NCBI RefSeq assembly: GCF_006345805.1
Contig: NC_043007.1
Span: forward strand, 54,808,001 to 54,872,000
Direction of reading: 5' to 3'
DNA from: Octopus sinensis
Taxonomy: Eukaryota
Length of the DNA stretch: 64,000 nucleotides
Below the pieces are notes generated by a model. It worked only from the letters and a program-made list of their open reading frames with translations. It was not told where the DNA came from and did not search any database. The translations under genes and the position numbers were made by a program. Shown here piece by piece: positions 5,830 to 63,279 of the stretch (the first letter of the stretch is position 1; each line of letters starts with the position of its first letter).

Positions 5830-8400
5830 CAGCTATCGGGCCATCGGAAAAACTGCTATGAAAATGACCGTTAAACAAAGGGAGATTACTGTGTGATTGA
5901 CCGTTATTAAGACAAAAGAGCTAGCTATTAGAATGACTGCTAAGTGAGGGGAAGGAGTAAAGGTAAGGGAGTAAAAATGTTCATAGTATTTGTGTAAGTG
6001 CACATGTCCATACATACACATGTGTGTCCACATGCCCATGTACATGCGCCTTTTAAGTATATACTCATCCACCCACATGCTCACCCACACATTTGCCAAA
6101 AAATATATACATACCCACGTACACGCTCACACACATGCGCGCACAAAAAAGGTTCATATACACTTCTATATACGCACATGCACAAGAAAAAACAGAGCTA
6201 AAGGCAAAATACAGAAAAATGTGTAAAAAATAAGCACATACCCATATATGCACATACCCGTGCACACACATCCACACGTGCATGCAAAAGATTCCATATA
6301 CACGTCTATATAGGCACAGGAAAAATGCAGGATGGAAGGTAGAATACAAAAAAAACGTGTAAAAAGTATATGAGCAATAAGCCTATAAAACAAAAAAGTA
6401 TAGAGAGATGAAAAGCTTGTACATGGATACAATATAGAAAGCAAGTCTTATCTGTGATCTTGTGGGGACCAAAAGCGTAACAAATATACAGCTACAGACA
6501 TATGCGATCTTATTGGATTATTCCTACTCGATACATTTGGCAAGACTTTTCCTGACGTATACTTCGCCATTTACAAAGATGATGCCCTCGCCTTAACTGC
6601 AAATACCAATGGACCAGCACAGGTTCGGTTTTGGAAGGACATTATCCATTTGATGAAAAATTTCGGTCTTAGCATAACTGCAGACACCAACCTGACAGTT
6701 GTCCATTTCCTAGACATATCCTTAGATCTAAATAAGAACATTTATAAGCCTTATAGGAAGCCCAACGATAGACTTAGTTATATTAATGTGGGTTCCTGCC
6801 ATCCCCCCATAGTGTTTAAAAATTTAGTAAAAAACATTAGCAAAAGAATTTCTAGCCTCCCCTTCGAAAGGGACATTTTTGATAGCATTGCCCCAGTATA
6901 TAATAAGGCTCTAAAAGATAGAGGATTTAGCGAGGAAATAACCTATACACCTGCCACCAGTCCACTAATTAAGAAGAGGAAACATAGGAATAGGAAAACT
7001 ATCTGGTTTACACACCCCTACTCACCCGAAATGACCATCAATATAGGCAAGTATTTCTTAGCACTGATAGATAGACATTTTCCAGTCAACCATAGTTACA
7101 GGAAGCTCTTCAATAGACATAACTTAAAAATCAGTTTCAGCTCAACTACTAATTTTAAAAATATAATCGCACATGACACACAAAAACCACAATATAAAAC
7201 CAACTGTTCATGCAGGGGTAAAAATTTGTGCCCACTAAATGGAACTTGCATGTCTGAGACCATCATTTATGAAGCCACCGTGGACTCTATATCCAATAAG
7301 GACACGGTTTCGACGAAGAAATACGTGGGCCTTACAGAGGGTAATTTCAAGGCCAGGTTCAATAATCACACCTTGAGCTTCAGGCACTAGGATAAAAGGA
7401 AAACGACCAAATTATCCAGTCATATATAGTCTTTAAAAGATAAGGTGTCAGTTACAACATCCATTGGAAGATCTTAGCCAAGTGTAAGCCCTACACCAAC
7501 GGCAGTGGAAAGTGCGCTCTTTGTGATATGGAAAGATGGCTCATCTGGAAAAGCAGCTTAGACCCCCACCACATGTCTGAATTCAAGAACTGAACTTTTT
7601 GGATCATGTCCATATGTGGCTAAATGTTTGTTACATTTTTGATCCCTCTAAGATCACAGATAGGACTTGCTTTCTATATTATGTCCATGTACAAGCTTTT
7701 TATCTCTCTATACTTTTTACTTATATTTCTTATATATTTTATATATATTTATAGAGATATTGTTTTATAGGTGTATTGCTCATATATTTTTTACACATGT
7801 TTTTTTCTGTATTCTACCTTCCATCCTGCATTTTTCCTGTGTGTATATAGACGGGTATATGGATGTATGCGGGTATGTGCTTGCATGAGAGTATGTGCGT
7901 ATATAGACGTGTGAACCTTTCTTGTGCATGTGTATGTGTGTGCCTATATGGATGTGTGCGGGTATGTGCATATATAGACGTGTTTTACTCTTATTGCTTA
8001 TTTTTTACACATTTTTCTGTATTTTGCCTTTAGCCCTGTTTTTTCTTGTGCATGTGCGTATATAGACGTGTATATGAACCTTTTTTGTGTGCATGTGTGT
8101 GAGCGTGTACGCGGGTATGTATATATTTTTTGGCAAATGTGTGGGTGAGCATGTGTGTGTTTCAAGTGAGGGTAGATGAGTATATACATATAGGCACATG
8201 TACGTGAGTGTGCAGGCGTGCATGTGTATGTATAGACATGCGCACTTATGCGAATACTATGACCATTTTTACTCCCTTACCTTTACTCCTTCTCCCTCAC
8301 TTAGCGGTCATTCTAATAGCTCTTTCGTCTTAATAGCGGTCAGTCACACAGTAATTTCCCTTTGTTTATTATTGTTCACATTTCATCTTATGTCTATTGT
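5830..8400 (+). mobile_element. 5'-truncated Naiad-type PLE (RT thumb + GIY-YIG) between inverted pLTR-like arms
   Basis: ORF 6650-7390 has HFLDISLDL, SCHPPIVFK, CSCRGKNLCPLNGTC, IIYEATV and YVGLTEGNFKARFNNH; a CALC motif follows stops. ~5830-6505 is an imperfect reverse complement of ~7605-8400. Confidence 0.85.
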
Positions 8401-8491
8401 CTAGAAGTCAGAGGACACACATGGGATGGAAGAGTTACTGAAAAGGTCGTCACAGGTGTGTGACAAAAGATTTCCAGACAATGTACGTATA

Positions 8492-8888
8492 GGCGCAGGA
8501 GTGGCTGTGGTAAGCAGCTTGCTAACTAACCACATGGTTCCGGGTTCAGTTCCACTGCGTGGCATCTTGGGCAAGTGTCTTCTGCTATAGCCTCGGGCTG
8601 ACCAAAGCCTTGTGAGTGGATTTGGTAGACGGAAACTGAAAGAAGTCTGTCGTATATATATATATGTATGTATGTGTATATGTTTGTGTGTCTGTGTTTG
8701 TCCCTCTAGCATTGCTTGACAACCGATGCTGGGGTGTTTACGTCACCGTCACTTAGCGGTTCGGCAAAAGAGACCGATAGAATAAGTACTGGGCTTACAA
8801 AGAATAAGTCCCGGGGTCGATTTGCTCGACTAAAGGCGGTGCTCCAGCATGGCCACAGTCAAATGACTGAAACAAGTAAAAGAGTAAG
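8492..8888 (+). mobile_element. tRNA-derived SINE (family 1)
   Basis: GGCGCAGGAGTGGCTGTGG head, B-box-like GGGTTCAGTTCC, internal (TA/TG)n and tail ...GACTGAAACAAGTAAAAGAG. Related copies at 35475, 53162, 55232 and 63295. Confidence 0.85.
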
Positions 8889-9203
8889 ATGAAATAAGAA
8901 CACTAATAAATGAGTGACGAATAAATATATAGTGCATGTGTTTATTTGGCAGGAAAAAAATGACCATTCCAAAATATATTAATATCTGTTTCAACATGAT
9001 TTCACATCAGGAATCTTGCAAAACAACCTCATAAATGTGTGTATATATAGAAGTGGTTCAGAGGAGAGAGTGCTGGATGTGTGTACAGGTAAAGTGTGTA
9101 TACATACATATATGTAACCAAGAAAAAAGCAACAAGAATGGATTAGTAGTTTAGTACAATTGTTTCATACTAAGAACAATTTTATTTGAAGCTGCAAATA
9201 CAA

Positions 9204-11437
9204 ATGGAAAACCCTTCGGTAAGGCTTATTTGTCCAACTAAGTCAGACGTTGGCCGACTTAGTAAATCTATCTTGGATACTGTTTTACCCCAAATAACCC
9301 GGATCCTTCCCTTAAGTCTATGGCTAAATACTGATGAAGTATTAATATGGTTCAATTCTCTAGCTAACACTAGTTGTCTATCTTTTATTCAATTTGATAT
9401 CAATAATTATTATTCTAGCATTTCCCCCATTTTGCTAAATAAATCGCTTATTTTTGCCATGAATCGCTCCCTCATATCTAGAGAAGAAATCGACATAGTA
9501 CTATTAGCTAGGAAAACTATTATAGAATTTGAAGGAAAATTATGGACTAGAGCAGATACCCCTAACAATTTTGATATACCTATAGGTTCTAGTGATTCGG
9601 CTGAGATAACTAATTTGGTAGGTGCATATCTATTAAAGTGCATAAAAAGGGAAATCCCAGAATTACAAGGTGGTCTATATAGGGATGATGCTCTGTTTGT
9701 TATTCCTAGTAATAATAAATCTAGCATTGAACAGATTAGAAAGAAAATTAACAGGTTTTTTAAAGATTTTAACCTTAGCATAACCTATGAACCTAGCACT
9801 AAGATAGTCAATTTCCTGGATATTACATTAGACCTTAACTCTAAGCTGCATTACCTATTTAGAAAGGAAGGTAAAATCACTAGATACATAAATAAATTAT
9901 CTAATCATCCCCCAAATATAATAAAATCTTTGATTAGAAATATTTCCTTAAGAATTTCCAAATTGTCATCTAATAATGATATATTTAACTCTCACTCTAA
10001 GCATTATAATATAGCATTATCTAAAGCAGGATATAACCAAGAGATTACCTTTATTGACAAGGCGAGCTTATATATTCCTAATAATGGGGTGAACATTAAC
10101 TACGTAAACAAAAATATAGATCGTGCCCGTAATAATAATAAAAATAAAAATAGATTTACGGTAGCAACAAACCCAGCGTCCAAATCAAATCATAAGAATA
10201 AAAATATAGACCAGAGCATAGGTAATTTTGATAAAACTAATTTAGATAAATCTAAAAAGCATACAAATAATAGTAATAAGAATAATGATTATGGTGGGAT
10301 CAAAAATTATTCAACTAACTCTAACTCTAATTTAAGAAAATATAATAAGGAAGATATAATCTGGTTGAATATTCCTTTTAACTGCTCGATATATGCGGCA
10401 AATTCAAAGTAATATTAGAAAAAAAATTTCCAGCCTCTCATAAGTATCATAGAATAATTTCTAAGAGAACGGTTAGGATTTCTTACTCAACCCTCCCAAA
10501 TATATCCACTATAATAGCTAGAATTAATAATAAAAACATTAAGTTAGTCAGGAATAATAAGACTAATACCAACATGAATACCAATAATAATTGTAATAAT
10601 ATTATCATAAATAAAAATAATAACAACAATAATAATAATTATCAAAATAAGTGCAGCATCAACAGCAATGGAATAACTAATAATGATATTGATATTAATA
10701 GGAATAATAATAATGATAATAATATGAGCAATACAAATGGAAATAATATCGGGAATGAAGATAACAATGATATCTATAGCAGTAATAAGCATTCGGATAT
10801 TAATACAAACAATAATAATAGCAATACCAATAATGTTGATAATTATGATATCGCTATAGTAGATCTAAATGATAGTATAAACGGATCGATAAATGGTAAC
10901 ACAACTTCAGATAACAATATTATCTATAATAACGAAAATAACACTCATAATAATTTGAATAGCAGCAATATGAGAGATCTATCCTTAAATAATTCTAAAT
11001 CTGAAAATTATCCCCCTAGTTGCAATTGTAGGATTAAGTCAAAATGCCCTGGTCTGTGTGGGGCCCATAATGTAATCTATAAATGTACTATAACTACTGC
11101 GAATAGCAAATTTTTTTGTCTGGGTTGTACTATAAAATTTAAGCAAAGAATTAGCAATCATCTTTCCTCCTTTAAGTTACGTCATAAAGCTGGCTGTACC
11201 ACACTTTCCAGTAAGATCTGGGAACTCAAAACTAATAATATTAAATATAACCTAAAATGGGAAATAGTTAGAAAGGCAATGCCTTATAAAAATAATAGGG
11301 TAGGTTGCCAACTCTGCTCCATGGAGACAAATGAAATTCTAAAGCATAGAAAAAATAAAAACCTATTGAATAACCGTATAGAGTTAGATTTGTCTTGCAT
11401 TCATTCAAAAATCAAAACTCTAAAATATTTTAAATAG
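9204..11437 (+). mobile_element. 5'-truncated Naiad-type PLE ORF (RT + GIY-YIG-like), one frameshift at ~10395-10397, two Asn-rich inserts
   Basis: ORF 9186-10412 has VRLICPTKSDVGRLSK, FIQFDINNYYSSI, GSSDSAEITNLVG, GGLYRDD and SNHPPNIIK. The second frame is open 10397-11437 with GKFKVILEKKFPASHKYHRIIS, CNCRIKSKCP, NVIYKC, FKQRISNH and CQLC. Confidence 0.92.
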
Positions 11438-13863: not shown

Positions 13864-15124
13864 TATTGGTTTTTTTAGGTGAAAATCAAAACAAAGTAAA
13901 CAATTGTGAAAAATGTATTTAATCAATACAATAGTTACCATTTGCTTCTATAACCTTTCGCCACCTGTTGGGTAGATCTTTAATCCCCTGTTCGAAGAAT
14001 TTAGGTTCTTTATTAGCAAAAAAAGTTTCCAAGAAAGTTTTCACGTCTTCATCAGAATTAAAATTTTTTCCATTCAATGAATTTTGCAGTGACCGAAACA
14101 GATGGAAATCTGATGGGCCCAGATCTGGAGAGTATGGAGGGTGAAGCAAAACTTCACACTCAAGCTGCAGCAACTTCTGCCAAGTAATCAAAGCAGTGTG
14201 TAGCCTTGCGTTGTCATGGTGGAAAACAACCCCTTTGTGATTCACCAGTTCTGGCCGTTTTTGATGAAGAGCTGTGTTTAATTTATCCAGTTGTTCACAA
14301 TAAACTTCTGAATTGATAGTTTTATTCAAGGGAAGACGTTAAAAAAAGATAACACCCTTCCAATCCCACCATATCGATAACAGAACTTTCTATGGGTGAA
14401 GACCTGCGTTGGATGTTCGTTTTGGAGAATCCCCTGCTTTTTTCCATGATCTTCGTTTCACATTATTGTAAAGTACCCACTTTTCATCTCCAGTAACAAT
14501 TGTTCTCAAAAAGGGTTTGTTGTTTTCCCTTTTCAGTAATGAATCACAAATGGAAACCCTCTGGACAAGATTTGCTTCTGTTAATTTATGGAGAACCCAA
14601 ACATCAAGTTTAGAAACATAACCAAGTTTATGCAATTCATTTTCCACACTTGTTTTGGATATGTTAATATCTGCAATTTGTCTGGTCGTAAGACAGCAGT
14701 CTTGTTTGACTACAGCTTTCAGTTGGTCGATGTCTATTTCTTTTTGCCAGCCAGAGTGAGGTGCGTCTCTTACTGAAAAATTCCCATATCGAAATCGAAC
14801 AAACCATTTCTGGCACACCTGTTCTGAAACAGCATTCTCTCCATACATATTGCATAACTTTCGGCAAGTTTCTGTTGCTTTCTTTCCTTTTCTGAAGTAA
14901 AAAAGCATAAGATGCCGATAGTGCTCTGCCCGGTCTTCCATGTCTAGGCTCAAATGCAATCAAACAAGTTGCAATCTCTCTCCTTTGAGGCTTGTTACAC
15001 ACTGATGTAACCTTGGTCGTTAGACCGAATACAGTTTCTAAAGAAAAAGAATATCGGAACAGTGATTAGAAGACCGAACAGTTGATACTAAAAAAATTAA
15101 ACGGAGTTTTTGGCCAACCCAATA
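13864..15124 (-). mobile_element. Mariner (DD34D-type) transposon, ~1.26 kb, inactivated
   Basis: MEDRAEHYRHLMLFYFRKGKKA, WVLHKL, IVTGDEKW, HDNARLH and HPPYSPDLGPSDFHLF motifs; two nonsense codons (HP*KV, FF*RL). 5' TIR TATTGGGTTGGCCAAAAACT is present; only CCAATA remains of the 3' TIR. Confidence 0.93.
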
Positions 15125-15887: not shown

Positions 15888-17071
15888 TTCTTTAGAAACT
15901 GTATTCGGTCTAACGACCAAGGTTACATCAGTGTGTAACAAGCCTCAAAGGAGAGAGATTGCAACTTGTTTGATTGCATTTGAGCCTAGACATGGAAGAC
16001 CGGGCAGAGCACTATCGGCATCTTATGCTTTTTTACTTCAGAAAAGGAAAGAAAGCAACAGAAACTTGCCGAAAGTTATGCAATATGTATGGAGAGAATG
16101 CTGTTCAGAACAGGTGTGCCAGAAATGGTTTGTTCGATTTCGATATGGGAATTTTTCAGTAAGAGACGCACCTCACTCTGGCTGGCAAAAAGAAATAGAC
16201 ATCGACCAACTGAAAGCTGTAGTCAAACAAGACTGCTGTCTTACGACCAGACAAATTGCAGATATTAACATATCCAAAACAAGTGTGGAAAATGAATTGC
16301 ATAAACTTGGTTATGTTTCTAAACTTGATGTTTGGGTTCTCCATAAATTAACAGAAGCAAATCTTGTCCAGAGGGTTTCCATTTGTGATTCATTACTGAA
16401 AAGGGAAAACAACAAACCCTTTTTGAGAACAATTGTTACTGGAGATGAAAAGTGGGTACTTTACAATAATGTGAAACGAAGAAGATCATGGAAAAAAGCA
16501 GGGGATTCTCCAAAACGAACATCCAACGCAGGTCTTCACCCATAGAAAGTTCTGTTATCGATATGGTGGGATTGGAAGGGTGTTATCTTTTTTTAACGTC
16601 TTCCCTTGAATAAAACTATCAATTCAGAAGTTTATTGTGAACAACTGGATAAATTAAACACAGCTCTTCATCAAAAACGGCCAGAACTGGTGAATCACAA
16701 AGGGGTTGTTTTCCACCATGACAACGCAAGGCTACACACTGCTTTGATTACTTGGCAGAAGTTGCTGCAGCTTGAGTGTGAAGTTTTGCTTCACCCTCCA
16801 TACTCTCCAGATCTGGGCCCATCAGATTTCCATCTGTTTCGGTCACTGCAAAATTCATTGAATGGAAAAAATTTTAATTCTGATGAAGACGTGAAAACTT
16901 TCTTGGAAACTTTTTTTGCTAATAAAGAACCTAAATTCTTCGAACAGGGGATTAAAGATCTACCCAACAGGTGGCGAAAGGTTATAGAAGCAAATGGTAA
17001 CTATTGTATTGATTAAATACATTTTTCACAATTGTTTACTTTGTTTTGATTTTCACCTAAAAAAACCAATA
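15888..17071 (+). mobile_element. Duplicated mariner copy lacking the 5' TIR
   Basis: ORFs 15931-16545 and 16606-17016 mirror the minus-strand copy, with the same two stops plus a 1-bp frameshift near 16104. Confidence 0.92.
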
Positions 17072-41575: not shown

Positions 41576-42861
41576 TAAGAATATAGATATATATATGTAT
41601 ATATACTTCCGACATGCTTCGAAGATATTGGTATTATTCCAAAAGAACAAAATGGTGTGAAACAATGTAGTCTTCTCTTCAAGGAAATGAAGAAATAAAA
41701 CTTGTCAATAAGACATTTTAACAGAATATGATGGATATGTAAAGTGATGAAAAATACACACATGTATTTATATATACTTCATATATTTCCATATAACCTG
41801 CTAATAAAATAGTTACAGCATATGGAGTTATCTCTTATGATAAAAGGCAGATTTTCTCTGCCTGTTCCCATGTTTCTTTTTAATACAATTCTACAATATA
41901 GAATTTCTTCAATTGGAATTTACCTATGATTTTTCCAAGTAGATTCGATTGGGTCATGGCATGTAAAGTGTTTCCAATTTGACCCCCAATTAAGCAAAAA
42001 TTCGAGAAAACTCAATATTTTACGATTTGCCTCTCTCATTTCAAGTCGTTTACTCCTGCTATTACCACCACACTTTCTCCTACTTTCTCTTTGCAAGTGT
42101 GAAAGTATTATATAACAGGGATGAGCCATTAATACTGGTCATCCTTTTTGCTAGAGGAAGATCCGCTATGGTCTTATATGCTACACCACTGGTTTTCAAT
42201 TCATATTAATCAAATTAATATTCAATTTTTCACCCTTATTATGTGTGTGTGTGTATTAGCAATTCGTATAAAATTGCATCAATGACTTGAACTTGAATAA
42301 GTGGTTTCACATAAATGGGGATAAATTAAAAAGGTTTGTTGTTATTATTACTGTTTCACTATTGTAATCACGTTTGTTGGTTCCTCGTCAGGGAAACGTT
42401 GTGTTGCATTTGTTAAATAATTGTAAACCGTAACCCTCCCCCTTTCGGAGAAGGGGCTTTGGTTATTGTTTAAAAATTGAATTGTGTCCCTGTTTGGGGA
42501 AATTGACAATATTTTCACCGTCTTTACGGAAGCATTTTTGTTAAAATGCCTTTGATAGAAGAAAGTCCAAAAATGAATTTCGCTGCAGCCATACACTTCT
42601 ATAGAAGAGGGAGGACAAGATCCAATTGATCGAAATTGCAAGAGACGGGCCTACAATTACAGTCTGTTATATATTTTGAGTATTGTTATCACTAGCGATA
42701 TCAAGATATAACTTTGTATTTTGTATTTTATGTGTAGATGTATATATATATAGATGTACATGTAATATGTACACATATATATATGCATAATATATCTACC
42801 CATATGCACACACACACACACACACACATACATAGGGGCAGGTGTGGCTGTGTGGTAACAA

Positions 42862-45196
42862 ACTACGTTCGAAGATACTGTACTTGATATGGGCGGTAGT
42901 GCCTTGCCGGTCTATGGCCTACCTTCAACAAACTGGGAAGGCACAAACACTCTGTCTTCACATTTGCTGCGTGAGACGTTTTAATGTTGACGAGCTTGCC
43001 GAGTACATAGCCGACAATGAGCCAAAGCTCCTTCCAGAACAGAAGTTCGCTTACAACTCTGTTGTTAATTAAGTCCGGGCCAAAGCTGGAGGGATTTTTT
43101 TCCTGGACGCTCCTGGGGGCACTGGGAAAACTTTTGTCAAATTAATATTGGCTGAGATTAGGTGAACACAAGGCATTGCCCTAGCTGTGGCATCATCTGG
43201 AATTGCGGATACTTTGTTGCCAGGCGGCAGGACAGCTCACTCCACTTTCAAGCTCCCGCTTGACTTAGCGAAGACTGAGACACCAACTTGCAACATCAGT
43301 AACAGCTCCGATCAGGCAGAAGTCTTCAGACAATGCAAGCTTATCGTTTGGGATGAATGCACGATGGCCCACAGAGGTGCTCTTGAGGCACTAGATAGAT
43401 CTCTCAGAGACATCAAACACTCTTCAGCTCCCATGGGAGGTATAACACTTCTTCTTTCAGGGGACTTCCGGCAAACACTTCCCGTTATTCCCAAAGGGAC
43501 TAGAGCTGATGCAGTAAGTGCGTGTCTTAAGTCATCCACATTGTGGCCACTGGTGAAGACTCTCAAACTTCACACCAATATGCGTGCTCATATGCGATGT
43601 GATATCACATCAGCAGCATTTTCTCACACCCTCCTTGCACTTGGCGAAGGCAAAATACCAGGGGATGAAAATGGTAATATTGCCATAGATTCCATTTGTA
43701 CCATTGTTAAAACGCCTTCTGATCTCAGAGATGCAATGTTCCCAGATCTACAAGCTAATTATCAGAATATGGATTGGATTGGCCAAAGGGCTATTCTGGC
43801 CCCAAGGAATAAAACTGTTCACCATATTAATGATGAAATGCTAAAACTCATTCCTGGAGATGTCTATGTATATAAGTCTAACGATACAACTCCTGACCCA
43901 GAGGATGTCATCAACTATCCAATAGAGGTACTCAATTCCTTTGAGCCCCCCAGACTACCACCGCACATTCTCAAACTTAAAGTTGGTGCCCCTATAATGC
44001 TTATTACAAATTTGGTTCCCCCAAAACAATGCAATGGCACACGTTTGATCGTTAAGTCCTTATCTCCCAATCTGATTGAGGCCACCATTATCACAGGGTG
44101 CAGTCGAGGCAACATTGTGCTCATACCTAGGATGCATCTTTTCCCATCAGGAGCAGATCTACCTTTCATATTTCGGAGGTCCCAGTTCCCAGTAAGGCCA
44201 TGTTTCGCAATGTCAAACACTGTCTGTGGTGGGAATACATTTGGGAGAGCCATGTTTCTCTCATGGTCAGCTTTATGTTGCCTGCTCGCGTGTCGGCAGT
44301 AACAGTGATGCTTTCGCATTCGTTCCACAACGAAAAACAAAAAGCATTGTGTACAAGGAGGTTTTATAGGATTACTACGTTTCATCATTTTTGAACACGT
44401 TAGTATTTCACTTACATATGACTCTCTTTTATGATGGCATTTACATTTTTAGGCGTTTCATGACATTAATTCACACTTAAACAACACCTGTCCTTCGCTC
44501 ACCTCTATTTCTATCCATTCATCATCAAACCACCAGCCTCATCTTCTATATCCAACGTACATGACACATCTACCCCCTACATCTACACTCTCACTGTTAA
44601 AGTTTACATAAGCGACAACACGATCGCAACATACACTTTGGAAACTAAGCAACAGATCATTTTATACAACAACAAATTTAATCATAACGTCCATCAATGA
44701 AAACATCTCCACCACTGTGTTGTGATTCATCTATTCAGCACCACTACAGTCTTGCTGGTCTGACATATGGTGAGTAGATGCTATTGTTCTATATTTTATA
44801 AATTACCCATGCTCCATTCCCCTCTTGCCTACATAGGGCATCCATTCTCTTTTAACACAGCATGAAGTTTTGTAACAGCACATCCGCTGCCGTTCGTGGA
44901 AAATGAAGAGACCCTATTCACCTGTGAACGTTTTACACCGCCTTCCACGACTATCAAATTCTTACAATTATGAGAACAATAACATGGCTCTTTTCAAAGC
45001 AACCTCGCATTCAATTCTTACACCATTCTACGAGGGGGTAGGAACCCCTTTACACGGCTTTCTATACACTTACAAATTCATTCATTCGCCGTAAACTTAT
45101 ATCAATATTTGCCTGAATAATCATCATAATTCAGTGCAATCATTAACAGTACTTTCAAGCAATTCAGCCCCAACCATCGCTGGGCTATTCTGCTAG
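42862..45196 (+). mobile_element. Helitron 3' part: PIF1-like helicase pseudogene plus 3' terminus
   Basis: FFLDAPGGTGKT, ASSGIA..LLPGGRTAHSTFKLP, IVWDECTMAH, GDFRQTLPVI, LKLKVGAPIML and RSQFPVRPCFAM. Terminal hairpin AGCCC..GGGCT followed by CTAG|T at 45193-45197. Confidence 0.92.
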
Positions 45197-48625: not shown

Positions 48626-48953
48626 ATAATGATATATATAGATATATAAGTCCATGTTGAGAAGAAAGATGAAGTGAACTATTGACCAAATTTGAAATTA
48701 CTGGAACGTCAAGTGAAGCAAGTACGTTATTATAAGCCCCATCTACTGTTTCTGGAAATTCGGGCATGAAATAATCCATTCTACTACAGCCACAAGGCCT
48801 GAATTTTGGTGGGGAGGTTTAGTGAAGTACACTGATCTCAGTATTTAACTGGTATTTATTTCATTCTGAAAGATGAAAAGCAGTCAACCTCAGTGGAAAG
48901 TAAAGACAGATGAAATACTACTAAGCATTTTGTCCAGCATGGTATTGGTTCTA

Positions 48954-49185
48954 AGGCGGCAAGCTAGCAGAAACGTTAGCACGCCGGGCGAAATGCTTAG
49001 CGGTATTTCGTCTGCCGTTACGTCGTGAGTTCAAATTCCGCCGAGGCCGACTTTGCCTTTCATCTTTTCGGGGTCGATAAATTAAGTACCAGTTACGTAC
49101 TGGAGTCGATGTAATCGACTTAATACCTATGTCTGCCCTTGTTTGTCCCCTCTGTGTTTAGCCCCTTGTGGGTAATAAAGAAATA
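48954..49185 (+). mobile_element. tRNA-derived SINE (family 2) with 13-bp TSD
   Basis: B-box GAGTTCAAATTCC; tail TGTCCCCTCTGTGTTTAGCCCCTTGTGGGTAATAAAGAAATA. TSD GGTATTGGTTCTA at 48941-48953 and 49186-49198. Confidence 0.9.
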
Positions 49186-56797: not shown

Positions 56798-57190
56798 GTA
56801 TATATATATATGTATAGGCCTGACGAGGCCTTTGGTTATTTAAACAGACAAATATAATCTTTAATGCCTAGGACTATATTACAATGGCATCTATAGGCAA
56901 TTTAAGTTGGATTGTCTCTTGACCATAGGCTGAAACAGCTGTAAGGAGCAGTTTATTTGTATTATTTTATTTTATTATTAATTTGCATATTGATGTATAT
57001 TGTTTTGTTTGATTTTCATGTTCCTATTTGTATAATTAATAAAAATGTGAAATTGTAATATCCGTAAGTTGATGATCGAAATGAATTTGTTTCTCCATTA
57101 TCTTATCTGTATTATGAATTAACGGTAAAATATTTTTACCTTCACCCATTCAATACAATAAATGAAATAATTGCATTGCAATTATAAGCA
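55560..57190 (+). mobile_element. PLE 3' fragment with a microsatellite-rich pLTR and a hammerhead relic
   Basis: One frame reads KCSLCINEIFFLIK..INNLKEQNVLCLHR (PLE C-terminal CxxC/CxH pattern); CTGACGA at 56820 and GAAACAGCTGTA at 56932. Confidence 0.55.
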
Positions 57191-57256
57191 TTTTTTTTTC
57201 GAATTTAAAGTTCTTTTTATCATTTCCAAATTAAAGTTTTCACAATAACTTTTCTT

Positions 57257-58753
57257 TTATATATACTCCATTATCTCTACCAAATCTTGGTAAATTTCCA
57301 TCGTTCGTGGCCACCTTGTAAGTCGGCATTTCATATGTTTTGACACGTTCTTGCCAGCTGCCTCGATGAACGCCTCAGCGTTGTTCTCGTGGACAAGTGT
57401 ACCTGTTTCTTTCCATTCGGTGCCCATCCTGACCCACGTATATCCATCTGATTGGTTTATTAAATCTTCCATCTCCTCACAATGCCTGTGATGGATCAAC
57501 GTTCCATAGTATTTGAATTTTCTATTCGTACCTGCATTTTCTCTAGTTTTTCTCTTAGGACTTACTTCCTCTTTTTTCTCCTCTCTCGGTTTCTCTCTTT
57601 CTCTCTTTTTGCTTTCTCTTCTTTCTTTTTCCTTCTCTTGTCTTTTTGGCTCTTTGTCTGTCGTCTCTCTACCCTGTGCCTTATGTTCCTTTCCTGTTGT
57701 TTCTTTTCCTTTTTGCATACCATCTTTTCCTTTCTCTTGGTTCTGTTCCTTCTCTTGTTCTTTTCCTGTTTTTTCTCTTTCCTTTAATTTACTTTCCTTT
57801 TCTTTCTCTTGCTTCTGCCTTGGCTCCTTCTCCACTACTTCTCCACCCTGTGAATTTTGCTCCTTTTCTACTATCTTCTTCCCTTTGTTTTCATTTTCCT
57901 TCAGTGCACTGTTACTTCCCTTCTCTTGTTGTTTCTCCGTTATTTCCTTTTCCTTGTTCTTTCCTTCATGTTCTTTTTCCTTCTTTTTTTTGTTCTCTCC
58001 ACTTTGTATCTCTTTTTGCTCCATTTCCCTCTCCGCTGTGAATTCATATAGCGGACATTCCTTTTTTATGTGCCCTCTTGACCCGCACAAGTAGCAATTC
58101 GGTTTTCTCCCCTCCACAATTACACTAATTGTTTTCTTGTTTTCTATTTCTATTTGGAAGGGAAACCGGTCGATGTCTTCCATTGTGGCCATCAGCCATA
58201 ACTCCACTCCGAATCCCTTCCAATTTACAACGTTGGTCTCCTTGATTGACCCTATCTCTACTTCCTCCTTTGCTGACCCTAAAATGGCTGTTACCAGCAT
58301 TTCTGTTTTTATTTCTGGGGGCACCTTTGGGACTCTTACCCGTACCCCTCGTCTTCCTTTATAAGTCAGCTACATAGTGAAATTTTTGTCTTTCAGTACA
58401 GTGGAAGCTAACGAGGCTGCCACTTCCTTTGTTGCGCATCTTACCTCCACCGTACCATATTTCTTTCCTCTGTCTACAAAAGTTGCTTTTTTCATAATGT
58501 CCCCCAGACATTTCTCTATTTCTTCAATCGTCACTCTCACCAGTTTTCTCGTGTTCCTATCTTGCGTTCTATACATTATTGTCTTGTTATTTCTCTCTTC
58601 TATTGTTTCCACAGGCGGAACCAGCTTTACGCTGTCACCCTCCCTTTTGACGAACTTCTTGTATTCCTTCAATTGTTCTTTTCTAAAGAACACTTCTCTT
58701 ATTCTAAGAGACTCATCACTTTTTGTTGTGGCGACCCCCGCGTAAGTCTCCAT
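57257..58753 (-). pseudogene. ORF1/gag-like CCHC protein, unit C; single premature TAG at 58370-58372
   Basis: ORFs 58370-58753 and 57257-58324 share a frame; TGG in the paralogs is TAG here. CYLCGSRGHIKKECP. Confidence 0.85.
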
Positions 58754-59270
58754 GACTTGAGGGTCGACACACCTTCTATAAAAGGTTCAAACACGCAGTG
58801 GCAAACGCCTCGCGCGATTCAATTTTTGACAATTTTTTAACAGTTTTTTTCCAAATTTTTCACATACAAAATAACTAACCAACACACTCAATGAAGACTG
58901 GAATTATTTTATTATTACCCACAAGGGGCGAACATAGAGGGGACAGTACAATCGGGGAAAAAAAATAGAATAATGAAATATGTATAAATGTGGTGTAATG
59001 CACCACCCGATCCCCGAAATCAGGTGGTTACATTTCGTCATTTTTAATTACATTTTATAATGTTTTCAAAAGTAACAAATTCATTTTTCAGCATTTCGCA
59101 ATACATTTCAATACATTTCAAAATAGAATTTCAAAATACATTATCAATTACAGAAAAATTGTTTTCACAAATTCACATATAAATCTTCCGCAATACATCT
59201 TTAAGATTTCAAAATACATTTAAAATAAACAAAAGTCTTTCCAAATTCTCTTTTTTTTTTCCTTATAATT

Positions 59271-60704
59271 TTAAATTAGTTCCATTACCTTTGTCAGGTC
59301 ATTGTAATTTTCCATCTCTCGTGGGTACCTTAGCAGTCGGCACTTTGTGTGTCTTGTTACGTTCATACCAGCGGCCTCGATAAACGCATCGGCGTTGTCT
59401 TCATGGACCAGTGCACCCGTTTCCTTCCACTCCGTGCCCATCCTGACCCATGAATATCCCTCCATTTCACTTATTAATTCCTCCATCTCCCCACAGTGTC
59501 TGTATTGAACCAATGTTCCGTAAAATTTGTACCTTCTATTTGACCCTATGTTTTCTTTAGTTTTCCTCTTCGGACTTACTTCTTCTTTACCTTCCTCTCT
59601 CGGTTTTTCTCTTTCTCTCTTTTTGCTTTCCTTTTCTTTTTCCTTCTCTTGTCTTTTTGGTTCTTTGTCTGTTGTATGTTCTTTTCCTGTTTTTTCTTTT
59701 TCTTTTTGTGTAACAGCCTTTCCTTTCTCTTGATTCTGTTCCTTCTCTTGTTTTTTTCCTGTTTTTTCTCTTTCCTTTATTTTACTTTCTTTTTCTTTCT
59801 CTATTACCTGTGACTTTTGTTCTTTTTCTATTAATTTCTTCCCTTTGCTTTCATTTTCCTTCTGTGTATTGTTATTTCCTTTTACCGTTGTTTCCTTTTC
59901 CTTGCTTTCTTTCTCCTTTAGAGTATTGTTCCCTTCTTCGGGTTCTTTTTCTTTCTCTTTTTTGTTTTCCTCTGCTTTTTCACACTCCGCCACGAATTCG
60001 TATAGCGGACATTCTTTTTTAATGTGACCTCTTGTCCCACATAAATAACAATTGGGTTTCCTCCCCTCAACGATTACGCAGAGGGTTCTTCCATCTTCTA
60101 CTTCTATTTGGAAGGGAATTCGTTCTATATCGCTGTTTGTGGCCGTCAGCCACATCTCTACTCCGAATCCCTTCCATTTCACTATGCTAGTCTCCTTTAT
60201 CGATCCAATTTCTATATCTTCCTCTGCTGATCCTAGGATGGCTGTTACCAGCCATTCTGTTTTTAAATCTGGGGGTATATTTGGGATTTTAACCCGTACC
60301 CCTCTTTTCCCTTTGTAGGTAGGCCACATGACGAAGCTTTCGGCTCTGAGTACGGTGGTAGCTAGCGAGGCCGCAACTTTTGTTGCGTGCTTCACCTCCA
60401 CCGTACCATATTTCTTGCCTCTGCACACAAAGGTAGCCTTTTTCATAACGTCGTCCAGACATTTTTCTATGTCTTCTATTGCTATTCTTGATAGCTTTCT
60501 TGTGGTCGTGTCCTGTGTTCTATAAATTATAGTTTTGTCCTCTTTTTCCTCCTTTGCTTCAGCAGGGGGGACCAGCTTCACTCTGTCACCTTCCCTTTCA
60601 ATGAATTTCTCAAATTCCTCTAGCTGTTCTTTTTTAAAGAACACCTCTCTTACTGTCAGCGGCGTATCGCTTTTCATTTCGGCGACCCCCGCGTAAGTCT
60701 CCAT
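59271..60704 (-). CDS. ORF1/gag-like CCHC zinc-knuckle protein, unit B, intact (477 aa from the ATG shared with the paralogs)
   Basis: METYAGVA... start aligned with units A and C; GKKYGTVEV, VRVKIPNIPP, VIVEGRKPNCYLCGTRGHIKKECP, a K/E-rich linker and a conserved C-terminal block. Confidence 0.85.
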   Translation of the reverse strand: METYAGVAEMKSDTPLTVREVFFKKEQLEEFEKFIEREGDRVKLVPPAEAKEEKEDKTIIYRTQDTTTRKLSRIAIEDIEKCLDDVMKKATFVCRGKKYGTVEVKHATKVAASLATTVLRAESFVMWPTYKGKRGVRVKIPNIPPDLKTEWLVTAILGSAEEDIEIGSIKETSIVKWKGFGVEMWLTATNSDIERIPFQIEVEDGRTLCVIVEGRKPNCYLCGTRGHIKKECPLYEFVAECEKAEENKKEKEKEPEEGNNTLKEKESKEKETTVKGNNNTQKENESKGKKLIEKEQKSQVIEKEKESKIKEREKTGKKQEKEQNQEKGKAVTQKEKEKTGKEHTTDKEPKRQEKEKEKESKKREREKPREEGKEEVSPKRKTKENIGSNRRYKFYGTLVQYRHCGEMEELISEMEGYSWVRMGTEWKETGALVHEDNADAFIEAAGMNVTRHTKCRLLRYPREMENYNDLTKVMELI

Positions 60705-61106
60705 GACTTGAGGGTCGGCGCACCTTCTACAAAAAGTTTTCAATGCGCAGCGGCAAATGCCTCGCATGATTCAAATTTCGATTTCTATATACAAAAATTA
60801 CCAATTACTTAACACACTCAATGAAGACTGGAATTGTTTTATTCCTACCCACAAGGGGCAACATAGAGGGGACAATACAATCGGGAAAAATAAAATAATG
60901 AGTTATGAAGTTTGTACAATGTGGTGTAAATCGAGCAGTTACATTTCGTCATTTTTTTATTACGTCAACAATATTTTCCAAATAAAAACATTTTACACAT
61001 TTTCTACATACATTTCAAAAATTTTACAAAGTTCAACATTTATTTTTCCAGAATTTAAAGTTCTTTTTATCATTTCCAAATTAAAGTTTTCACAATACCT
61101 TTTCTT

Positions 61107-62586
61107 TTATATATACTCCATTATCTCTAACAAATCTTGGTAAATTTCCATCGTTTGTGGCCACCTTGTAAGTCGGCATTTCATATGTTTTGTCACGTTC
61201 TTGCCAGCTGCCTCGATGAACGCCTCAGCGTCATTCTCGTGGACGAGTGTACCTGTTTCTTTCCATTCGGTGCCCATCCTGACCCACGTATATCCATCTG
61301 TTTGGTTTATTAAATCTTCCATCTCCTCACAATGCCTGTGATGGATCAACGTTCCATAGTATTTGAATTTTCTATTCGTACCTGCATTTTCTCTAGTTTT
61401 TCTCTTAGGACTTACTTCCTCTTTTTTCTCCTCTCGGTTTCTCTCTTTCTCTCTTTTTGCTTTCTCTTCTTTCTTTTTCCTTCTCTTGTCTTTTTGGCTC
61501 TTTGTCTGTCGTCTCTCTACCCTGTGCCTTATGTTCCTTTCCTGTTGTTTCTTTTCCTTTTTGCATACCATCTTTTCCTTTCTCTTGGTTCTGTTCCTTC
61601 TCTTGTTCTTTTCCTGTTTTTTCTCTTTCCTTTAATGTACTTTCCTTTTCTTTCTCTTGCTTCTGCCTTGGCTCCTTCTCCACTACTTCTCCACCCTGTG
61701 AATTTTGCTCCTTTTCTACTATCTTCTTCCCTTTGTTTTCATTTTCCTTCAGTGCGCTGTTACTTCCCTTCTCTTGTTGTTTCTCCGTTATTTCCTTTTC
61801 CTTGTTTTCGGTGTTCTTTCCTTCGTATTCGTTTTCCTTCTCTCCACTTTGTGTCTCTTTTTGCTCTGCTGTGAATTCATACAGTGGACATTCCTTTTTT
61901 ATGTGCCCTCTTGACCCGCACAAGTAGCAATTCGGTTTTCTCCCCTCCACAATTACACTAATTGTTTTCTCATTTTCTATTTCTATTTGGAAGGGAAACC
62001 TTTCGATGTCTTCCATTGTGGCCATCAGCCACAACTCTACTCCGAATCCCTTCCAATTTACAACGTTGGTCTCCTTTATTGACCCTATTTCTACTTCCTC
62101 CTTTGCTGACCCTAGAATGGCTGTTACCAGCATTTCTGTTTTTATTTCTGGGGGCACCTTTGGGACTCTTACCCGTACCCCTCGTCTTCCTTTATACGTC
62201 GGCCACATAGTGAAATTTTTGGCTTTCAGGACAGTGGAAGCTAATGAGGCCGCCACTTCCTTTGTTGCGCATCTCACCTCCACCGTACCATATTTCTTTC
62301 CTCTGTCTACAAAAGTTGCTTTTTTCATAATGTCCCCCAGACATTTCTCTATTTCTTCAATCGTCACTCTCACCAGTTTTCTCGTGTTCCTATCTTGCGT
62401 TCTATACGTTATCATCTTGTTATTTCTCTCCTCTATTGTTTCAACAGGCGGAACCAGCTTTACGCTGTCACCCTCCCTTTTGACGAACTTCTCGTATTCC
62501 TTCAATTGTTCTTTTCTAAAGAACACTTCTCTTATTCTCAGAGACTCATCACTTTTTGTTGTAGCGACCCCCGCGTAAGTCTTCAT
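61107..62586 (-). pseudogene. ORF1/gag-like CCHC protein, unit A; 2-bp deletion frameshift near 61433
   Basis: ORF 61405-62586 plus the 61107-61571 frame reconstruct a protein colinear with unit C; one CT of a (CT)n run is missing relative to C. Confidence 0.85.
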
Positions 62587-63240
62587 GACTTGAGGGTCGG
62601 CACACCTTCTATAAAAGGTTCACACACGCAGCGGCAAACGTCTCGCGCGATTCAATTTTTTAACAATTTTTTCCAAATTTTTCACATACAAAATAACTAA
62701 CCAACACAATCAATGAAGACTGGAATTGTTAGCTCTTCTTTTTTCTCTACATTGTATACTTTATAGACAATAGTCTTTTCTTTAATTTAATTTTTTATTA
62801 TCCATCTGGACTATTCCATTTCTGCACGCTAATTTTATTTTTAATTTAATTCCCATTCATGTGAAACCACTTATTCAAGTTCAAATCATTAATGCAATTT
62901 TATACCAATTGCTATTTTTACTTATATTATACTTTAGTTTGATTTTAATTATTACTTACTACATATAATTCAATTGTTATTATTATTTTTATTGTTAAAG
63001 TGAAAGCATCTGACATAAAATAGAGAAATATTTTTGTTTCACTTTTAACACGTAATACTGAAATAGTGGAGAAGATATGATATTGCTATGGGCTCGCTCT
63101 AGGCAAGAAATTGAACATTTTTTTTTGCCCATGAAACTACATGGATCCTAAGTAAGGCATGTGTAAAATTTGAATGAAATTGGTTGTGTAGTTCTCAAGT
63201 TTTAGGGAATCGTAGTGGCGAAGACAGACACACATTCTCA

Positions 63241-63279
<39 letters not shown>

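What the first reader, a model, noticed from the sequence alone, without database searches (positions are those of the whole stretch)
57195..62728. Head-to-tail array of ORF1-only 'half-LINE' units
Seen: three tandem ~1.7-1.9-kb units on the minus strand. Each starts with the same AATTCCAGTCTTCATTGA motif (62727, 60835, 58905) and has a short leader, then one ~480-500-codon ORF with a single CX2CX4HX4C knuckle. Only ~270-370 nt separate each stop from the next unit, so there is no room for RT/endonuclease, and I see no LTRs. Units A and B end in a conserved tail plus a (TAA)/A-rich end. Knowledge: an RRM-like region followed by V..EG.P..CxxC is typical of L1/Tx1-clade ORF1 proteins, and mammalian HAL1 elements are ORF1-only L1 derivatives. 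Inference: a cephalopod HAL1-like non-autonomous retroelement that keeps its own RNA-binding protein and forms tandem arrays, or a domesticated ORF1 gene family. I know of no description of this, but cannot check the literature here.
Basis: partly seen in the sequence, partly recalled or inferred. Interest (0 to 1): 0.88.

Follow-up and report, generated by a model that had tools for sequence, protein, structure and literature searches.

The report
Stacked ORF1-only LINE derivatives in octopus
Three head-to-tail 1.7-1.9-kb units in an octopus genome are copies of a mobile element that kept only the RNA-binding gene (ORF1) of a LINE retrotransposon, borrows the 3' end of a complete LINE found next to such units elsewhere, and piles up at one specific target site; the kind is known from mammals and flies, but this cephalopod version has not been described.

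Summary
There are three minus-strand units (62727-60836, 60835-58906, 58905-~57200), and each starts with the same 18-mer. Only unit B has an intact ORF (498 aa). Unit A carries a 2-nt frameshift, and unit C has a TGG>TAG stop and is cut short at its 3' end.

The ORF is a true LINE ORF1 homologue. It is 38% identical (E=1e-41) to ORF1 of a 5.2-kb APE+RT+zf-RVT LINE of the L1/Tx1 type. That LINE lies directly downstream of unit arrays at five Octopus vulgaris loci.

Units, LINE and a SINE in the window share a ~45-nt 3' block. Unit copies lie on at least eight chromosomes in three or more subfamilies. dN/dS between subfamilies is 0.12-0.17, yet 23 of 26 copies are broken. This is a transposon pattern, not that of a host gene family.

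Six arrays sit at fixed points in a ~1-kb host repeat. Empty sites show that AATTCCAGTCT(GTTATA) is a target-site duplication.

Best reading: a HAL1-like, ORF1-only non-autonomous retroelement stacked by repeated site-specific insertion, with local duplication also contributing. It is a new variant of a known kind, of moderate interest.

The parts
62728..63279 (-). 5' arm of the host repeat ('host5', ~550 nt). It begins right after a (TA)n run and ends ...AGAAAAAAGAAGAGCTAAC just before unit A.
   Evidence: 88-97% identical to the sequence that precedes unit arrays in L001, L002, L003 and L007 on other chromosomes.
60836..62727 (-). Unit A (1892 nt, A-type subfamily). It comprises the duplicated target AATTCCAGTCT (62717-62727), a 141-nt leader, an ORF at 62586-61107 broken by a 2-nt deletion near 61435, a 271-nt 3' UTR and a conserved tail at ~60836-60880.
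   Evidence: It is 95-97% identical over its full length to copies in L002, L003 and L004.
58906..60835 (-). Unit B (1930 nt, B-type subfamily, ~78% identical to A and C). It is the only intact copy in the window.
59271..60767 (-). Intact ORF of unit B (498 aa; the conserved start METYAG is at 60704). Parts: N-terminal ORF1 domain (residues ~22-235), CCHC knuckle (residues 239-254, nt 60006-60053), K/E-rich low-complexity linker (residues ~262-405), and a C-terminal ~90-aa domain (nt 59274-59540).
   Evidence: Pfam zf-CCHC. Residues 56-253 are 38% identical to LINE ORF1, E=1e-41. dN/dS is 0.12-0.17 against two other intact subfamily copies. AlphaFold is confident only for residues ~150-240, a beta-alpha-beta-beta-alpha-beta fold whose best Foldseek matches are RRMs at E~1e-3.
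57200..58905 (-). Unit C (A-type, ~1706 nt). Its ORF at 58753-57257 is interrupted by TAG at 58370-58372. The 3' UTR is cut at ~57200, so the tail is missing.
58895..58905 (-). AATTCCAGTCT at the B/C junction (also at 60825-60835 and 62717-62727). It is a copy of the target sequence regenerated at each junction, either as a target-site duplication or as a conserved 5' terminus.
   Evidence: The same 11 nt (17 nt for the LINE: AATTCCAGTCTGTTATA) occurs once at empty sites and n+1 times at filled sites.
58906..58950 (-). 3' terminal block of unit B (TTGTACTGTCCCCTCTATGTTCGCCCCTTGTGGGTAATAATAAAAT). This is the presumed recognition tail for the partner LINE's reverse transcriptase.
   Evidence: The block is shared by four unit subfamilies, three LINE subfamilies, the SINE and a small element. 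The last 60 nt are 84-93% conserved, against 49-66% for the whole 3' UTR.
48945..49185 (+). SINE copy carrying the same 3' block (...TGTCCCCTCTGTGTTTAGCCCCTTGTGGGTAATAAAGAAATA). It is a second non-autonomous passenger of the same LINE family.
42257..42794 (+). A second, rearranged copy of the host repeat with an unoccupied target site. It consists of a 76-nt host5 piece (42257-42332), ~320 nt of other sequence ending ...GGGCCTAC, then AATTACAGTCTGTTATATATTTTGAG... (host3, 42655-42794).

Best explanation
The three units are copies of an ORF1-only, non-autonomous non-LTR retrotransposon of octopods. Each unit has a short leader and one gene for an ORF1-type nucleic-acid-binding protein. That protein has an N-terminal RRM-like region, one CCHC knuckle, a K/E-rich linker and a C-terminal domain. 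Each unit then has a 3' UTR ending in a ~45-nt block identical to the 3' end of a 5.2-kb autonomous L1/Tx1-type LINE (ORF1 + APE-RT-zinc finger ORF2).

Inferred mechanism: unit RNA is coated by its own ORF1 protein and is reverse-transcribed in trans by the LINE's ORF2 protein. ORF2 protein recognises the shared tail, as it does for the SINE with the same tail.

Integration is target-primed and site-selective. The nick falls at ...AAC^AATTCCAGTCT... in a ~1-kb host repeat. The 11-17 nt after the nick are duplicated. The element's own end (...AAAAC) recreates the left half of the site, so every insertion regenerates the target. Further copies then stack head-to-tail, usually upstream of a LINE that is already there.

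Local unequal exchange or gene conversion then adds and homogenises copies.

In the window the stack is host5-A-B-C. B is still coding, A and C are decayed, and the downstream part (end of C, any LINE, host3) is lost.
For: Shown:
1. ORF1 homology to the LINE's ORF1. The LINE has Exo_endo_phos, RVT_1 and zf-RVT domains, and its RT matches human L1 ORF2p best (1.8e-37, against ~1e-24 for R2).
2. A shared 3' block in units, LINE and SINE, conserved well above the rest of the 3' UTR.
3. Full-length units with the same ends occur at five O. vulgaris loci on four chromosomes. Further copies lie outside the host repeat in L004 and L006, and scrambled copies in L005.
4. Purifying selection between subfamilies: dN/dS 0.12-0.17 with dS > 1. 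Yet 23 of 26 individual copies are broken. This is the pattern of a transposon selected through its active masters.
5. Site specificity. The same host5 flank precedes arrays in the window, L001, L002, L003 and L007, and host3 follows the LINE in L002, L003, L007 and L008. The LINEs at L002 and L003 differ strongly in 5' UTR and ORF1 (68-76% identity), yet sit at the same nucleotide with the same 17-18-nt duplication.
6. Three empty sites show one copy of AATTCCAGTCTGTTATAT.
7. In L006 a unit is bracketed by an 18-nt direct repeat, exactly after a pre-existing tail.
8. Clades of units span chromosomes: L001_8 with L007_1, and L001_1-3 with the L008 units. The 5' junctions vary within the L008 array.

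Known parallels:
- Tandem copies sandwiching a TSD, for Tx1-mobilised SINEU-3 in a mariner target (PMC4494074).
- Tandems formed by consecutive insertion (PMC5932611).
- L1-Tx1 is listed among recently active O. vulgaris LINEs (PMC13282606).
Against: - No experiment or transcript data shows that unit RNA is made, or that the LINE's ORF2 protein mobilises it.
- Copies within one array share a few private substitutions: 6 for window A/C and 9 for L002_1/L002_2, against 1-2 for other pairs. Some neighbours are 99.2-99.8% identical. DNA-level duplication or conversion therefore contributes, and could by itself explain A-B-C as a duplicated A-B block.
- For the units, as opposed to the LINE, the 11 nt AATTCCAGTCT could be a conserved 5' terminus rather than a TSD.
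- The left flank of filled A-type sites (host5...GCTAAC) differs from that of the empty sites (filler...GCTAAC).
- Sequential insertion does not by itself explain why the LINE is always the 3'-most member.
- The loci were found through annotated unit or ORF1 proteins, so the sample is small (10 loci) and biased.
- The RRM fold is only weakly supported (overall pLDDT 47; Foldseek E~1e-3).
Confidence: 0.74

Rival explanations
1. The units are LINE-derived, but this array and most others were built at the DNA level. A dimer or A-B block was amplified by unequal crossing-over or replication slippage, as for a young satellite. Arrays reached other chromosomes by segmental duplication or ectopic exchange. 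Retrotransposition of single units would then be rare or extinct.
For: Within-array private substitutions: 6 for W_A/W_C and 9 for L002_1/L002_2, against 1-2 for other pairs. Blocks of 99.2-99.8% identical neighbours in L001, and 99.3-99.6% in L009 and L010. Junctions in L001 and L009 are identical from copy to copy. The pattern A-B-A' fits a duplicated two-unit block whose second B was lost with the truncation of C.
Against: - B is only 78% identical to its two neighbours.
- L001 units 1-3 are closer to L008 units on another chromosome than to L001 units 4-8, and L001_8 pairs with L007_1.
- Junction sequences differ from copy to copy in L008.
- Units occur outside the host repeat, one with an 18-nt flanking repeat (L004, L006).
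- Host arms are 88-92% identical between some loci while the units inside are 95-97% identical, so the units are younger than the hosts.
Confidence: 0.25
2. Each array is made in a single integration event. After copying its own RNA, the LINE reverse transcriptase jumps from the 5' end of that template to the 3' tail of a unit RNA, then to another, giving a [unit]n-[LINE] concatemer.
For: The full LINE is always the 3'-most member, and there is exactly one of it, in L001, L002, L003, L007 and L008. This is what cis-preference followed by template jumps would give. Junctions are precise tail-to-head with small variable stretches in L008. Template jumping is an established property of non-LTR reverse transcriptases (R2; my knowledge, not tested here).
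Against: - Members of one array belong to clades that differ by 4-5% (L001) or 22% (window A versus B). This fits insertions spread over time better than one event.
- LINE 5' UTR/ORF1 regions between loci (47-93% identity) are more diverged than units between loci (95-99%), suggesting the LINEs arrived first.
- The repeated 11-18 nt at junctions matches the target sequence seen at empty sites.
Confidence: 0.1
3. The units are not separate elements. They are a repeated 5' module of one long composite element (host5 + units + LINE + host3) that moves or is copied as a whole.
For: The same order host5-units-LINE-host3 is seen at five loci, and the composite is bounded by (TA)n on both sides.
Against: - Every unit ends in the complete 3' tail that also ends the LINE and the SINE.
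- Host-repeat pieces exist without units or LINE (window 42257-42794; L005).
- Units and LINEs occur outside the host repeat (L004, L006, L009, L010).
- LINEs in L002 and L003 have different 5' UTR/ORF1 modules inside similar hosts.
Confidence: 0.07
4. The locus is a tandemly duplicated host gene family domesticated from a LINE ORF1, comparable to L1TD1 or ZCCHC3-type genes.
For: Strong purifying selection between subfamilies (dN/dS 0.12-0.17). One intact 498-aa ORF in the window. Some copies are annotated as proteins in O. vulgaris.
Against: - Two of the three window copies, and 23 of 26 copies overall, carry frameshifts or stops.
- Copies are dispersed on many chromosomes with retroelement ends and a LINE/SINE-type tail.
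- The annotated proteins are truncated or chimeric gene models.
- There are no introns and no conserved unique flanks.
Confidence: 0.04

Closest known systems
HAL1 (half-L1) elements of mammals
   Same: A non-autonomous LINE derivative that keeps ORF1 and lacks ORF2, and is mobilised in trans by the parent LINE. Such lineages arose repeatedly and lasted for long periods (PMC5753468, citing Smit 1999 and Bao & Jurka 2010).
   Different: HAL1 derives from mammalian L1, which has a coiled-coil/RRM/CTD ORF1 and a poly(A) end. The octopus units have a CCHC-knuckle ORF1 and a specific ~45-nt tail shared with a SINE. Their ORF1 is only 35-38% identical to that of the partner LINE. They stack at a specific target rather than being dispersed at random.
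HeT-A / TAHRE / TART telomeric retrotransposons of Drosophila
   Same: HeT-A encodes only a Gag (ORF1-type) protein, depends on a reverse transcriptase supplied in trans, and forms head-to-tail arrays together with its RT-encoding relatives through repeated insertion at one place (PMC5537684, PMC5932611).
   Different: Those elements belong to the jockey clade and add to chromosome ends. The octopus arrays lie inside chromosomes (for example 64 Mb into a 226-Mb record), in an interspersed host repeat, with target-site duplications.
Tx1-clade target-specific LINEs and their passengers (Tx1L in Tx1D, Keno, Tx1-Mar with SINEU-3)
   Same: APE-type LINEs with a C-terminal zinc finger that insert at one sequence inside another repeat. 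Non-autonomous partners use the same site and are found in tandem 'sandwiching a TSD' (PMC4494074).
   Different: The passengers described there are SINEs without coding capacity. Here the main passenger carries a selected ORF1 gene. Membership of the octopus LINE in the Tx1 clade proper was not tested by RT phylogeny.
Tandem TE dimers formed by double insertion, and R1 arrays in Drosophila
   Same: Insertion-site preference produces head-to-tail dimers that later expand by unequal exchange (PMC5932611). The mixed signals seen here match this two-step picture.
   Different: That work concerns autonomous elements or their truncated copies, not a distinct ORF1-only lineage.

Membership tests
ORF1-only non-autonomous LINE derivative (HAL1-like class) | Encodes a homologue of a LINE ORF1 protein | tested here: met
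   BLASTP of unit B against ORF1 of the LINE in L004: 38% identity over 201 aa, E=1e-41. A profile search finds 920 relatives at E <= 1e-3. The eight hits I read carry the same N-terminal domain plus knuckle, and several continue into an ORF1-like C-terminal part.
ORF1-only non-autonomous LINE derivative (HAL1-like class) | Lacks ORF2 (endonuclease and reverse transcriptase) | tested here: met
   271-365 nt lie between the stop and the next unit. tblastn with the LINE's APE and RT finds nothing in the window. Units in L001-L008 have the same 1.8-1.9-kb length.
ORF1-only non-autonomous LINE derivative (HAL1-like class) | Shares the terminus needed for reverse transcription with an autonomous partner | tested here: met
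   The ~45-nt 3' block is conserved in units, LINEs and the SINE.
ORF1-only non-autonomous LINE derivative (HAL1-like class) | Copies dispersed by retrotransposition (defined ends, TSDs, 5' truncation) | tested here: met
   Full-length copies with identical ends occur at five O. vulgaris loci on four chromosomes. One copy lacks the first 19 nt in a different flank (L004). One copy has an 18-nt flanking repeat (L006). The sample is only 10 loci.
ORF1-only non-autonomous LINE derivative (HAL1-like class) | Mobilised in trans by the partner's ORF2 protein | not testable with these tools
   Needs a retrotransposition assay or insertion polymorphism data.
HAL1 proper (mammalian L1 derivative) | Derived from mammalian L1, with an L1-type ORF1 (Transposase_22) and a poly(A) tail | tested here: not met
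   No Pfam L1 ORF1 domain, only zf-CCHC. The units end in a specific tail, not poly(A). It is an analogue of HAL1, not a member.
L1/Tx1 superfamily LINE (the partner element) | ORF2 with an N-terminal APE endonuclease, RT and a C-terminal zinc finger | tested here: met
   PF03372, PF00078 and PF13966. The best solved relative is human L1 ORF2p.
Tx1 clade | RT groups with Tx1 elements in a phylogeny | not tested
   No reference RT set was available. A published O. vulgaris annotation lists 13 recently active 'L1-Tx1' families (PMC13282606), but I could not link them to this element.
Tx1 clade | Insertion at a specific target sequence | tested here: met
   Same nucleotide position in the host repeat at L002 and L003 (A-type site) and at L001, L007 and L008 (second site). 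Empty sites seen in L007, L008 and window 42650.
Type I ORF1 protein (RRM + CCHC knuckle) | RRM fold upstream of the knuckle | tested here: inconclusive
   AlphaFold pLDDT is 70-87 only for residues ~150-240, which form a beta-alpha-beta-beta-alpha-beta unit. The top Foldseek hits are RRMs, but at E~1e-3. Sequence profiles give only E=0.03-1 to RRMs.
HeT-A-type telomeric retrotransposon | Arrays at chromosome ends | tested here: not met
   All loci lie tens of Mb from the ends of chromosome-scale records.
Domesticated ORF1-derived host gene | Intact, conserved coding sequence at a unique locus | tested here: not met
   23 of 26 copies are disrupted, and the family is multi-copy on many chromosomes.

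The most novel reading that the evidence does not exclude
The ORF1-only units are an old, independently evolving lineage that lives by stacking directly in front of its partner LINE at a self-regenerating target site. These stacks would also serve as the place where ORF1/5' UTR modules are exchanged with ORF2.

That would explain why seven LINE copies are 94-99% identical in ORF2 but only 69-93% in ORF1 and 47-90% in the 5' UTR. The units would be both parasites of the LINE family and a reservoir of ORF1 diversity for it.
Probability: 0.2. Interest if true: 0.75.

Novelty: new variant of a known kind. Interest (0 to 1): 0.55.

Why it matters
ORF1-only LINE derivatives are documented mainly in mammals (HAL1) and as the Drosophila telomere element HeT-A.

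A third, independent case in a cephalopod has three useful properties:
- Its ORF1 gene has been kept under purifying selection across subfamilies that are saturated at silent sites.
- It has an identifiable partner LINE and a SINE that share one tail.
- It has a defined integration site.

Together these give a compact natural system for three questions:
- What does ORF1 protein contribute in cis versus in trans?
- How does a stringent 3' tail recruit reverse transcriptase?
- How does site-specific insertion seed tandem arrays and young satellites?

It also matters for annotation. Several O. vulgaris 'proteins' are chimeric models built on these units. At least one tandem LINE array of this family runs into an assembly gap.

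Tried and rejected
- Sequence search of unit B against solved structures gave only zinc-knuckle hits.
- The word-indexed protein searches found few relatives, all from Octopus (9, 2 and 11 hits). The alignment for AlphaFold therefore stayed shallow and the model is poor (pLDDT 47).
- An exact look-up of the unit B protein found no annotated gene, so the window's own record and species remain unidentified. Similarity to O. vulgaris copies (95-97%) points to O. vulgaris or a very close relative.
- ARAGORN finds no tRNA in the window, so the SINE head is not a recognisable tRNA.
- The 3' tail alignment predicts only a small invariant hairpin (CCC...GGG) with no covariation, so I claim no RNA structure.
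- I looked for the missing LINE and host3 downstream of unit C and found none. An inversion linking the array to the host-repeat copy at 42257-42794 does not fit the order of parts.
- I looked by eye for terminal inverted repeats at the two ends of the host repeat and saw none. Its nature is unknown.
- I first read the L004 copy as a simple 5' truncation with 13 nt of filler. The same GAAATCTACCCACGTGT follows two other small elements in that locus, so its 5' junction is not understood.
- I first concluded from pairwise identities that A and C are independent insertions. The count of shared private substitutions weakened this, and I now leave both routes open.

Full report
**1. What is in the window**

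The 18-mer AATTCCAGTCTTCATTGA occurs exactly three times, all on the minus strand, ending at 62727, 60835 and 58905. Chance expectation is 0.15, and no shuffle reaches three. These sites mark three direct repeats:
- unit A, 62727-60836, 1892 nt
- unit B, 60835-58906, 1930 nt
- unit C, 58905-~57200, ~1706 nt

Each unit has a leader, one long reading frame with a single CX2CX4HX4C knuckle (Pfam zf-CCHC), a lysine/glutamate-rich stretch, a C-terminal ~90-aa region and a 3' UTR.

Only B is intact (59271-60767, 498 aa). A is split by a 2-nt deletion near 61435. C carries one in-frame TAG (58370-58372) and stops at ~57200 inside its 3' UTR, followed by GA9 and unrelated DNA.

A and C are ~97% identical to each other. 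B is ~78% identical to either. There is no endonuclease or reverse-transcriptase coding anywhere in the 64 kb.

**2. The gene is a LINE ORF1**

Protein searches found only Octopus proteins, on many chromosome-scale records, and several of these are truncated or chimeric gene models.

I fetched the DNA around them from the O. vulgaris assembly GCA_951406725.2. The same units recur there:

| Locus | Units |
|---|---|
| L001 | eight in tandem |
| L002 | two |
| L003 | one |
| L004 | one |
| L007 | one |
| L008 | at least eight |
| L005, L006 | scrambled copies |

In L001, L002, L003, L007 and L008 the last unit is followed at once by a ~5.2-kb element. That element has its own ORF1, and an ORF2 with Exo_endo_phos, RVT_1 and zf-RVT domains. 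Its RT matches human L1 ORF2p far better than R2 proteins.

Unit B residues 56-253 align to this LINE's ORF1 at 38% identity, E=1e-41.

A profile of the N-terminal domain finds 920 representatives at E <= 1e-3. The named ones come from O. bimaculoides, O. sinensis, O. vulgaris and Argonauta hians.

AlphaFold on a shallow alignment is poor overall (pLDDT 47). It is confident for residues ~150-240, a beta-alpha-beta-beta-alpha-beta unit whose best structural matches are RRMs at E~1e-3. Sequence profiles support only the knuckle. The RRM assignment is therefore plausible but not established.

**3. Shared 3' end**

Units of four subfamilies, LINEs of three subfamilies, a SINE in the window (48945-49185) and another small element all end in the same ~45-nt block...TTGTATTGTCCCCTCTATGTT.GCCCCTTGTGGGTAATAATAAAAC.

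Between unit subfamilies the last 60 nt are 84-93% identical, while the 3' UTR as a whole is 49-66% identical.

By the established LINE/SINE 'common tail' rule (PMC4494074, PMC3747384), the tail would be the handle by which the LINE's reverse transcriptase takes these RNAs. That step is inferred, not shown.

**4. Transposon or host gene**

Three intact ORFs from three subfamilies (window B, L004_1, L001_5) give dN/dS of 0.12-0.17 with dS above 1. The protein has therefore mattered throughout the divergence of the family.

Yet only 3 of 26 copies examined are intact. Copies lie on many chromosomes with defined ends.

This is the signature of a mobile element selected through its active masters, not of a domesticated gene cluster.

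**5. Where the units sit**

The window array and the L001, L002, L003 and L007 arrays are preceded by the same ~550-nt sequence (host5), which starts after a (TA)n run.

After the LINE in L002 and L003 comes a conserved ~200-nt sequence (host3) that ends in (TA)n. In L007 and L008 a 308-nt filler lies between the LINE and host3.

Host3 begins AATTCCAGTCTGTTATATATTTTGAG. The A-type LINEs begin AATTCCAGTCTGTTATA, and the A- and B-type units begin AATTCCAGTCT.

At three places the site is unoccupied: L007 ~16600, L008 ~18412 and window ~42650. There ...GGGCTAAC is followed by a single AATTCCAGTCTGTTATAT. For the LINE the 17 nt are thus a target-site duplication. For the units the 11 nt are either a duplication or a conserved 5' end.

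A second lineage (L001, L007, L008) uses a site at the host5/filler border, with (C/A)ACATGGAGGAAA repeated in the same way.

The LINEs in L002 and L003 share 97% identity in ORF2 but only 68-76% in 5' UTR and ORF1, yet occupy the same nucleotide position. This argues for independent, site-specific integration.

In L006 a unit lies between two copies of an 18-nt sequence, exactly after a pre-existing tail.

Each element ends in ...AAAAC and the site's left half is ...CTAAC. Every insertion therefore rebuilds a usable site, which would make stacking self-perpetuating. This last point is inference.

**6. How the arrays grow**

Stacking is not special to the units:
- L010 has three full LINEs head-to-tail, running into an assembly gap.
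- L009 (O. sinensis) has a full LINE followed by at least three copies of an internally deleted LINE.
- SINE tails are often followed at once by a truncated SINE.

Signals for repeated insertion:
- Unit clades span chromosomes: L001_8 pairs with L007_1, and L001_1-3 group with the L008 units.
- L001 is built of two clades in positional order.
- Junctions vary within L008.
- Units are younger than the host arms.

Signals for local DNA-level processes:
- Blocks of 99.2-99.8% identical neighbours.
- Identical junctions in L001 and L009.
- Private substitutions shared within arrays: 6 for window A/C and 9 for L002_1/L002_2, against 1-2 for other pairs.

Both routes probably act, as described for Drosophila elements, where double insertion makes dimers that unequal exchange then expands (PMC5932611).

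For the window I cannot decide between three separate insertions (C, then B, then A) and a duplicated A-B block whose second half was lost with the truncation of C.

I also cannot explain why the full LINE is always the 3'-most member. Addition at the host5-proximal site and template jumping after cis-copying of the LINE RNA would both give that order.

**7. Comparison with known systems**

Functionally the units are the counterpart of mammalian HAL1, which is ORF1-only and mobilised in trans (PMC5753468). In their array habit they resemble Drosophila HeT-A, which is Gag-only and stacked with its RT-bearing relatives (PMC5537684).

They are members of neither:
- The ORF1 is of the knuckle type, not the L1 Transposase_22 type.
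- The 3' end is a specific tail, not poly(A).
- The arrays are chromosome-internal.

The integration behaviour is closest to Tx1-clade elements and their SINE passengers, for which tandem copies sandwiching a TSD inside another transposon are described (PMC4494074).

A 2026 repeat annotation of O. vulgaris lists 13 recently active L1-Tx1 families, but mentions neither ORF1 nor non-autonomous LINE derivatives, and uses 'tandem' only for Tandem Repeats Finder (PMC13282606). The octopus-brain LINE paper concerns RTE elements (PMC9115989). I found no description of this element in the searchable literature. Repbase entries could not be checked.

**8. Verdict**

The element is a new variant of a known kind.

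The most interesting open thread is the modular LINE: ORF2 is 94-99% identical across copies, against 69-93% for ORF1. It raises the possibility that these stacks are where ORF1 modules are exchanged.

Noticed in passing
L002:11203-16221, L003:11165-16331, L004:1010-6200(-), L007:11083-16298, L008:12857-18110, L009:4506-9758, L010:4431-9709: The partner LINE is mosaic. Across seven full-length copies ORF2 is 94-99% nt identical, but ORF1 is only 69-93% and the 5' UTR 47-90%. This suggests repeated replacement of the 5' UTR/ORF1 module by recombination.
   Followed up: partly
L009:4506-21353 (O. sinensis CM016867.1) and L010:4431-19184 (O. vulgaris OX597840.1): Head-to-tail arrays of the LINE itself. 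L009 has one full copy followed by at least three 3.57-kb internally deleted copies (ORF1 plus the last third of ORF2, 99.3-99.5% alike). L010 has three full copies running into an assembly gap of Ns.
   Followed up: partly
window 48945-49185 (+); also L004, L005, L007: A ~240-nt SINE has the same 3' block as the LINE and the units. In other loci SINE tails are often followed directly by a 5'-truncated SINE. ARAGORN sees no tRNA in the window.
   Followed up: partly
window 42257-42794 (+): A rearranged copy of the host repeat with an unoccupied target site. It lies 14 kb from the array, in the opposite orientation.
   Followed up: yes
window 57190-57200: Unit C ends inside its 3' UTR at ...CTTTAAATTC, followed by GAAAAAAAAA and unrelated AT-rich DNA. 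The tail, any LINE and host3 are absent. The cause is unknown (deletion or something else).
   Followed up: partly
L005:1-39929 (O. vulgaris OX597818.1): Scrambled units, LINE fragments, host-repeat pieces and SINEs fill the ~20-kb space between two large haemocyanin genes (Tyrosinase/Haemocyan_bet_s domains).
   Followed up: no
P0002, P0007, P0008, P0009 (annotated O. vulgaris proteins): These gene models join fragments of the unit ORF to unrelated pieces, for example an AP-endonuclease-like stretch in P0009. They span 3-21 kb of repeats and look like annotation artefacts.
   Followed up: partly
L004:7813-8671 and 9907-10422: Small (~335-520 nt) tandem elements end in the SINE-type tail. Each is followed by the same GAAATCTACCCACGTGT, which also precedes the A-type unit in that locus. 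Not understood.
   Followed up: no
window 43187-44302 (+); 14390-14959 (-) and 15931-16545 (+); 6650-11437 (+): Other transposon remains. One is a PIF1-like helicase ORF (PF05970, 2.5e-48), probably Helitron-derived. Two are inverted mariner-type fragments; the one I scanned has a Mos1 HTH domain (PF17906) and the other shares most of its sequence with it. Three ORFs have no Pfam match, and to my eye two of them (6650-7390 and 10574-11437) carry a GIY-YIG-like motif.
   Followed up: partly
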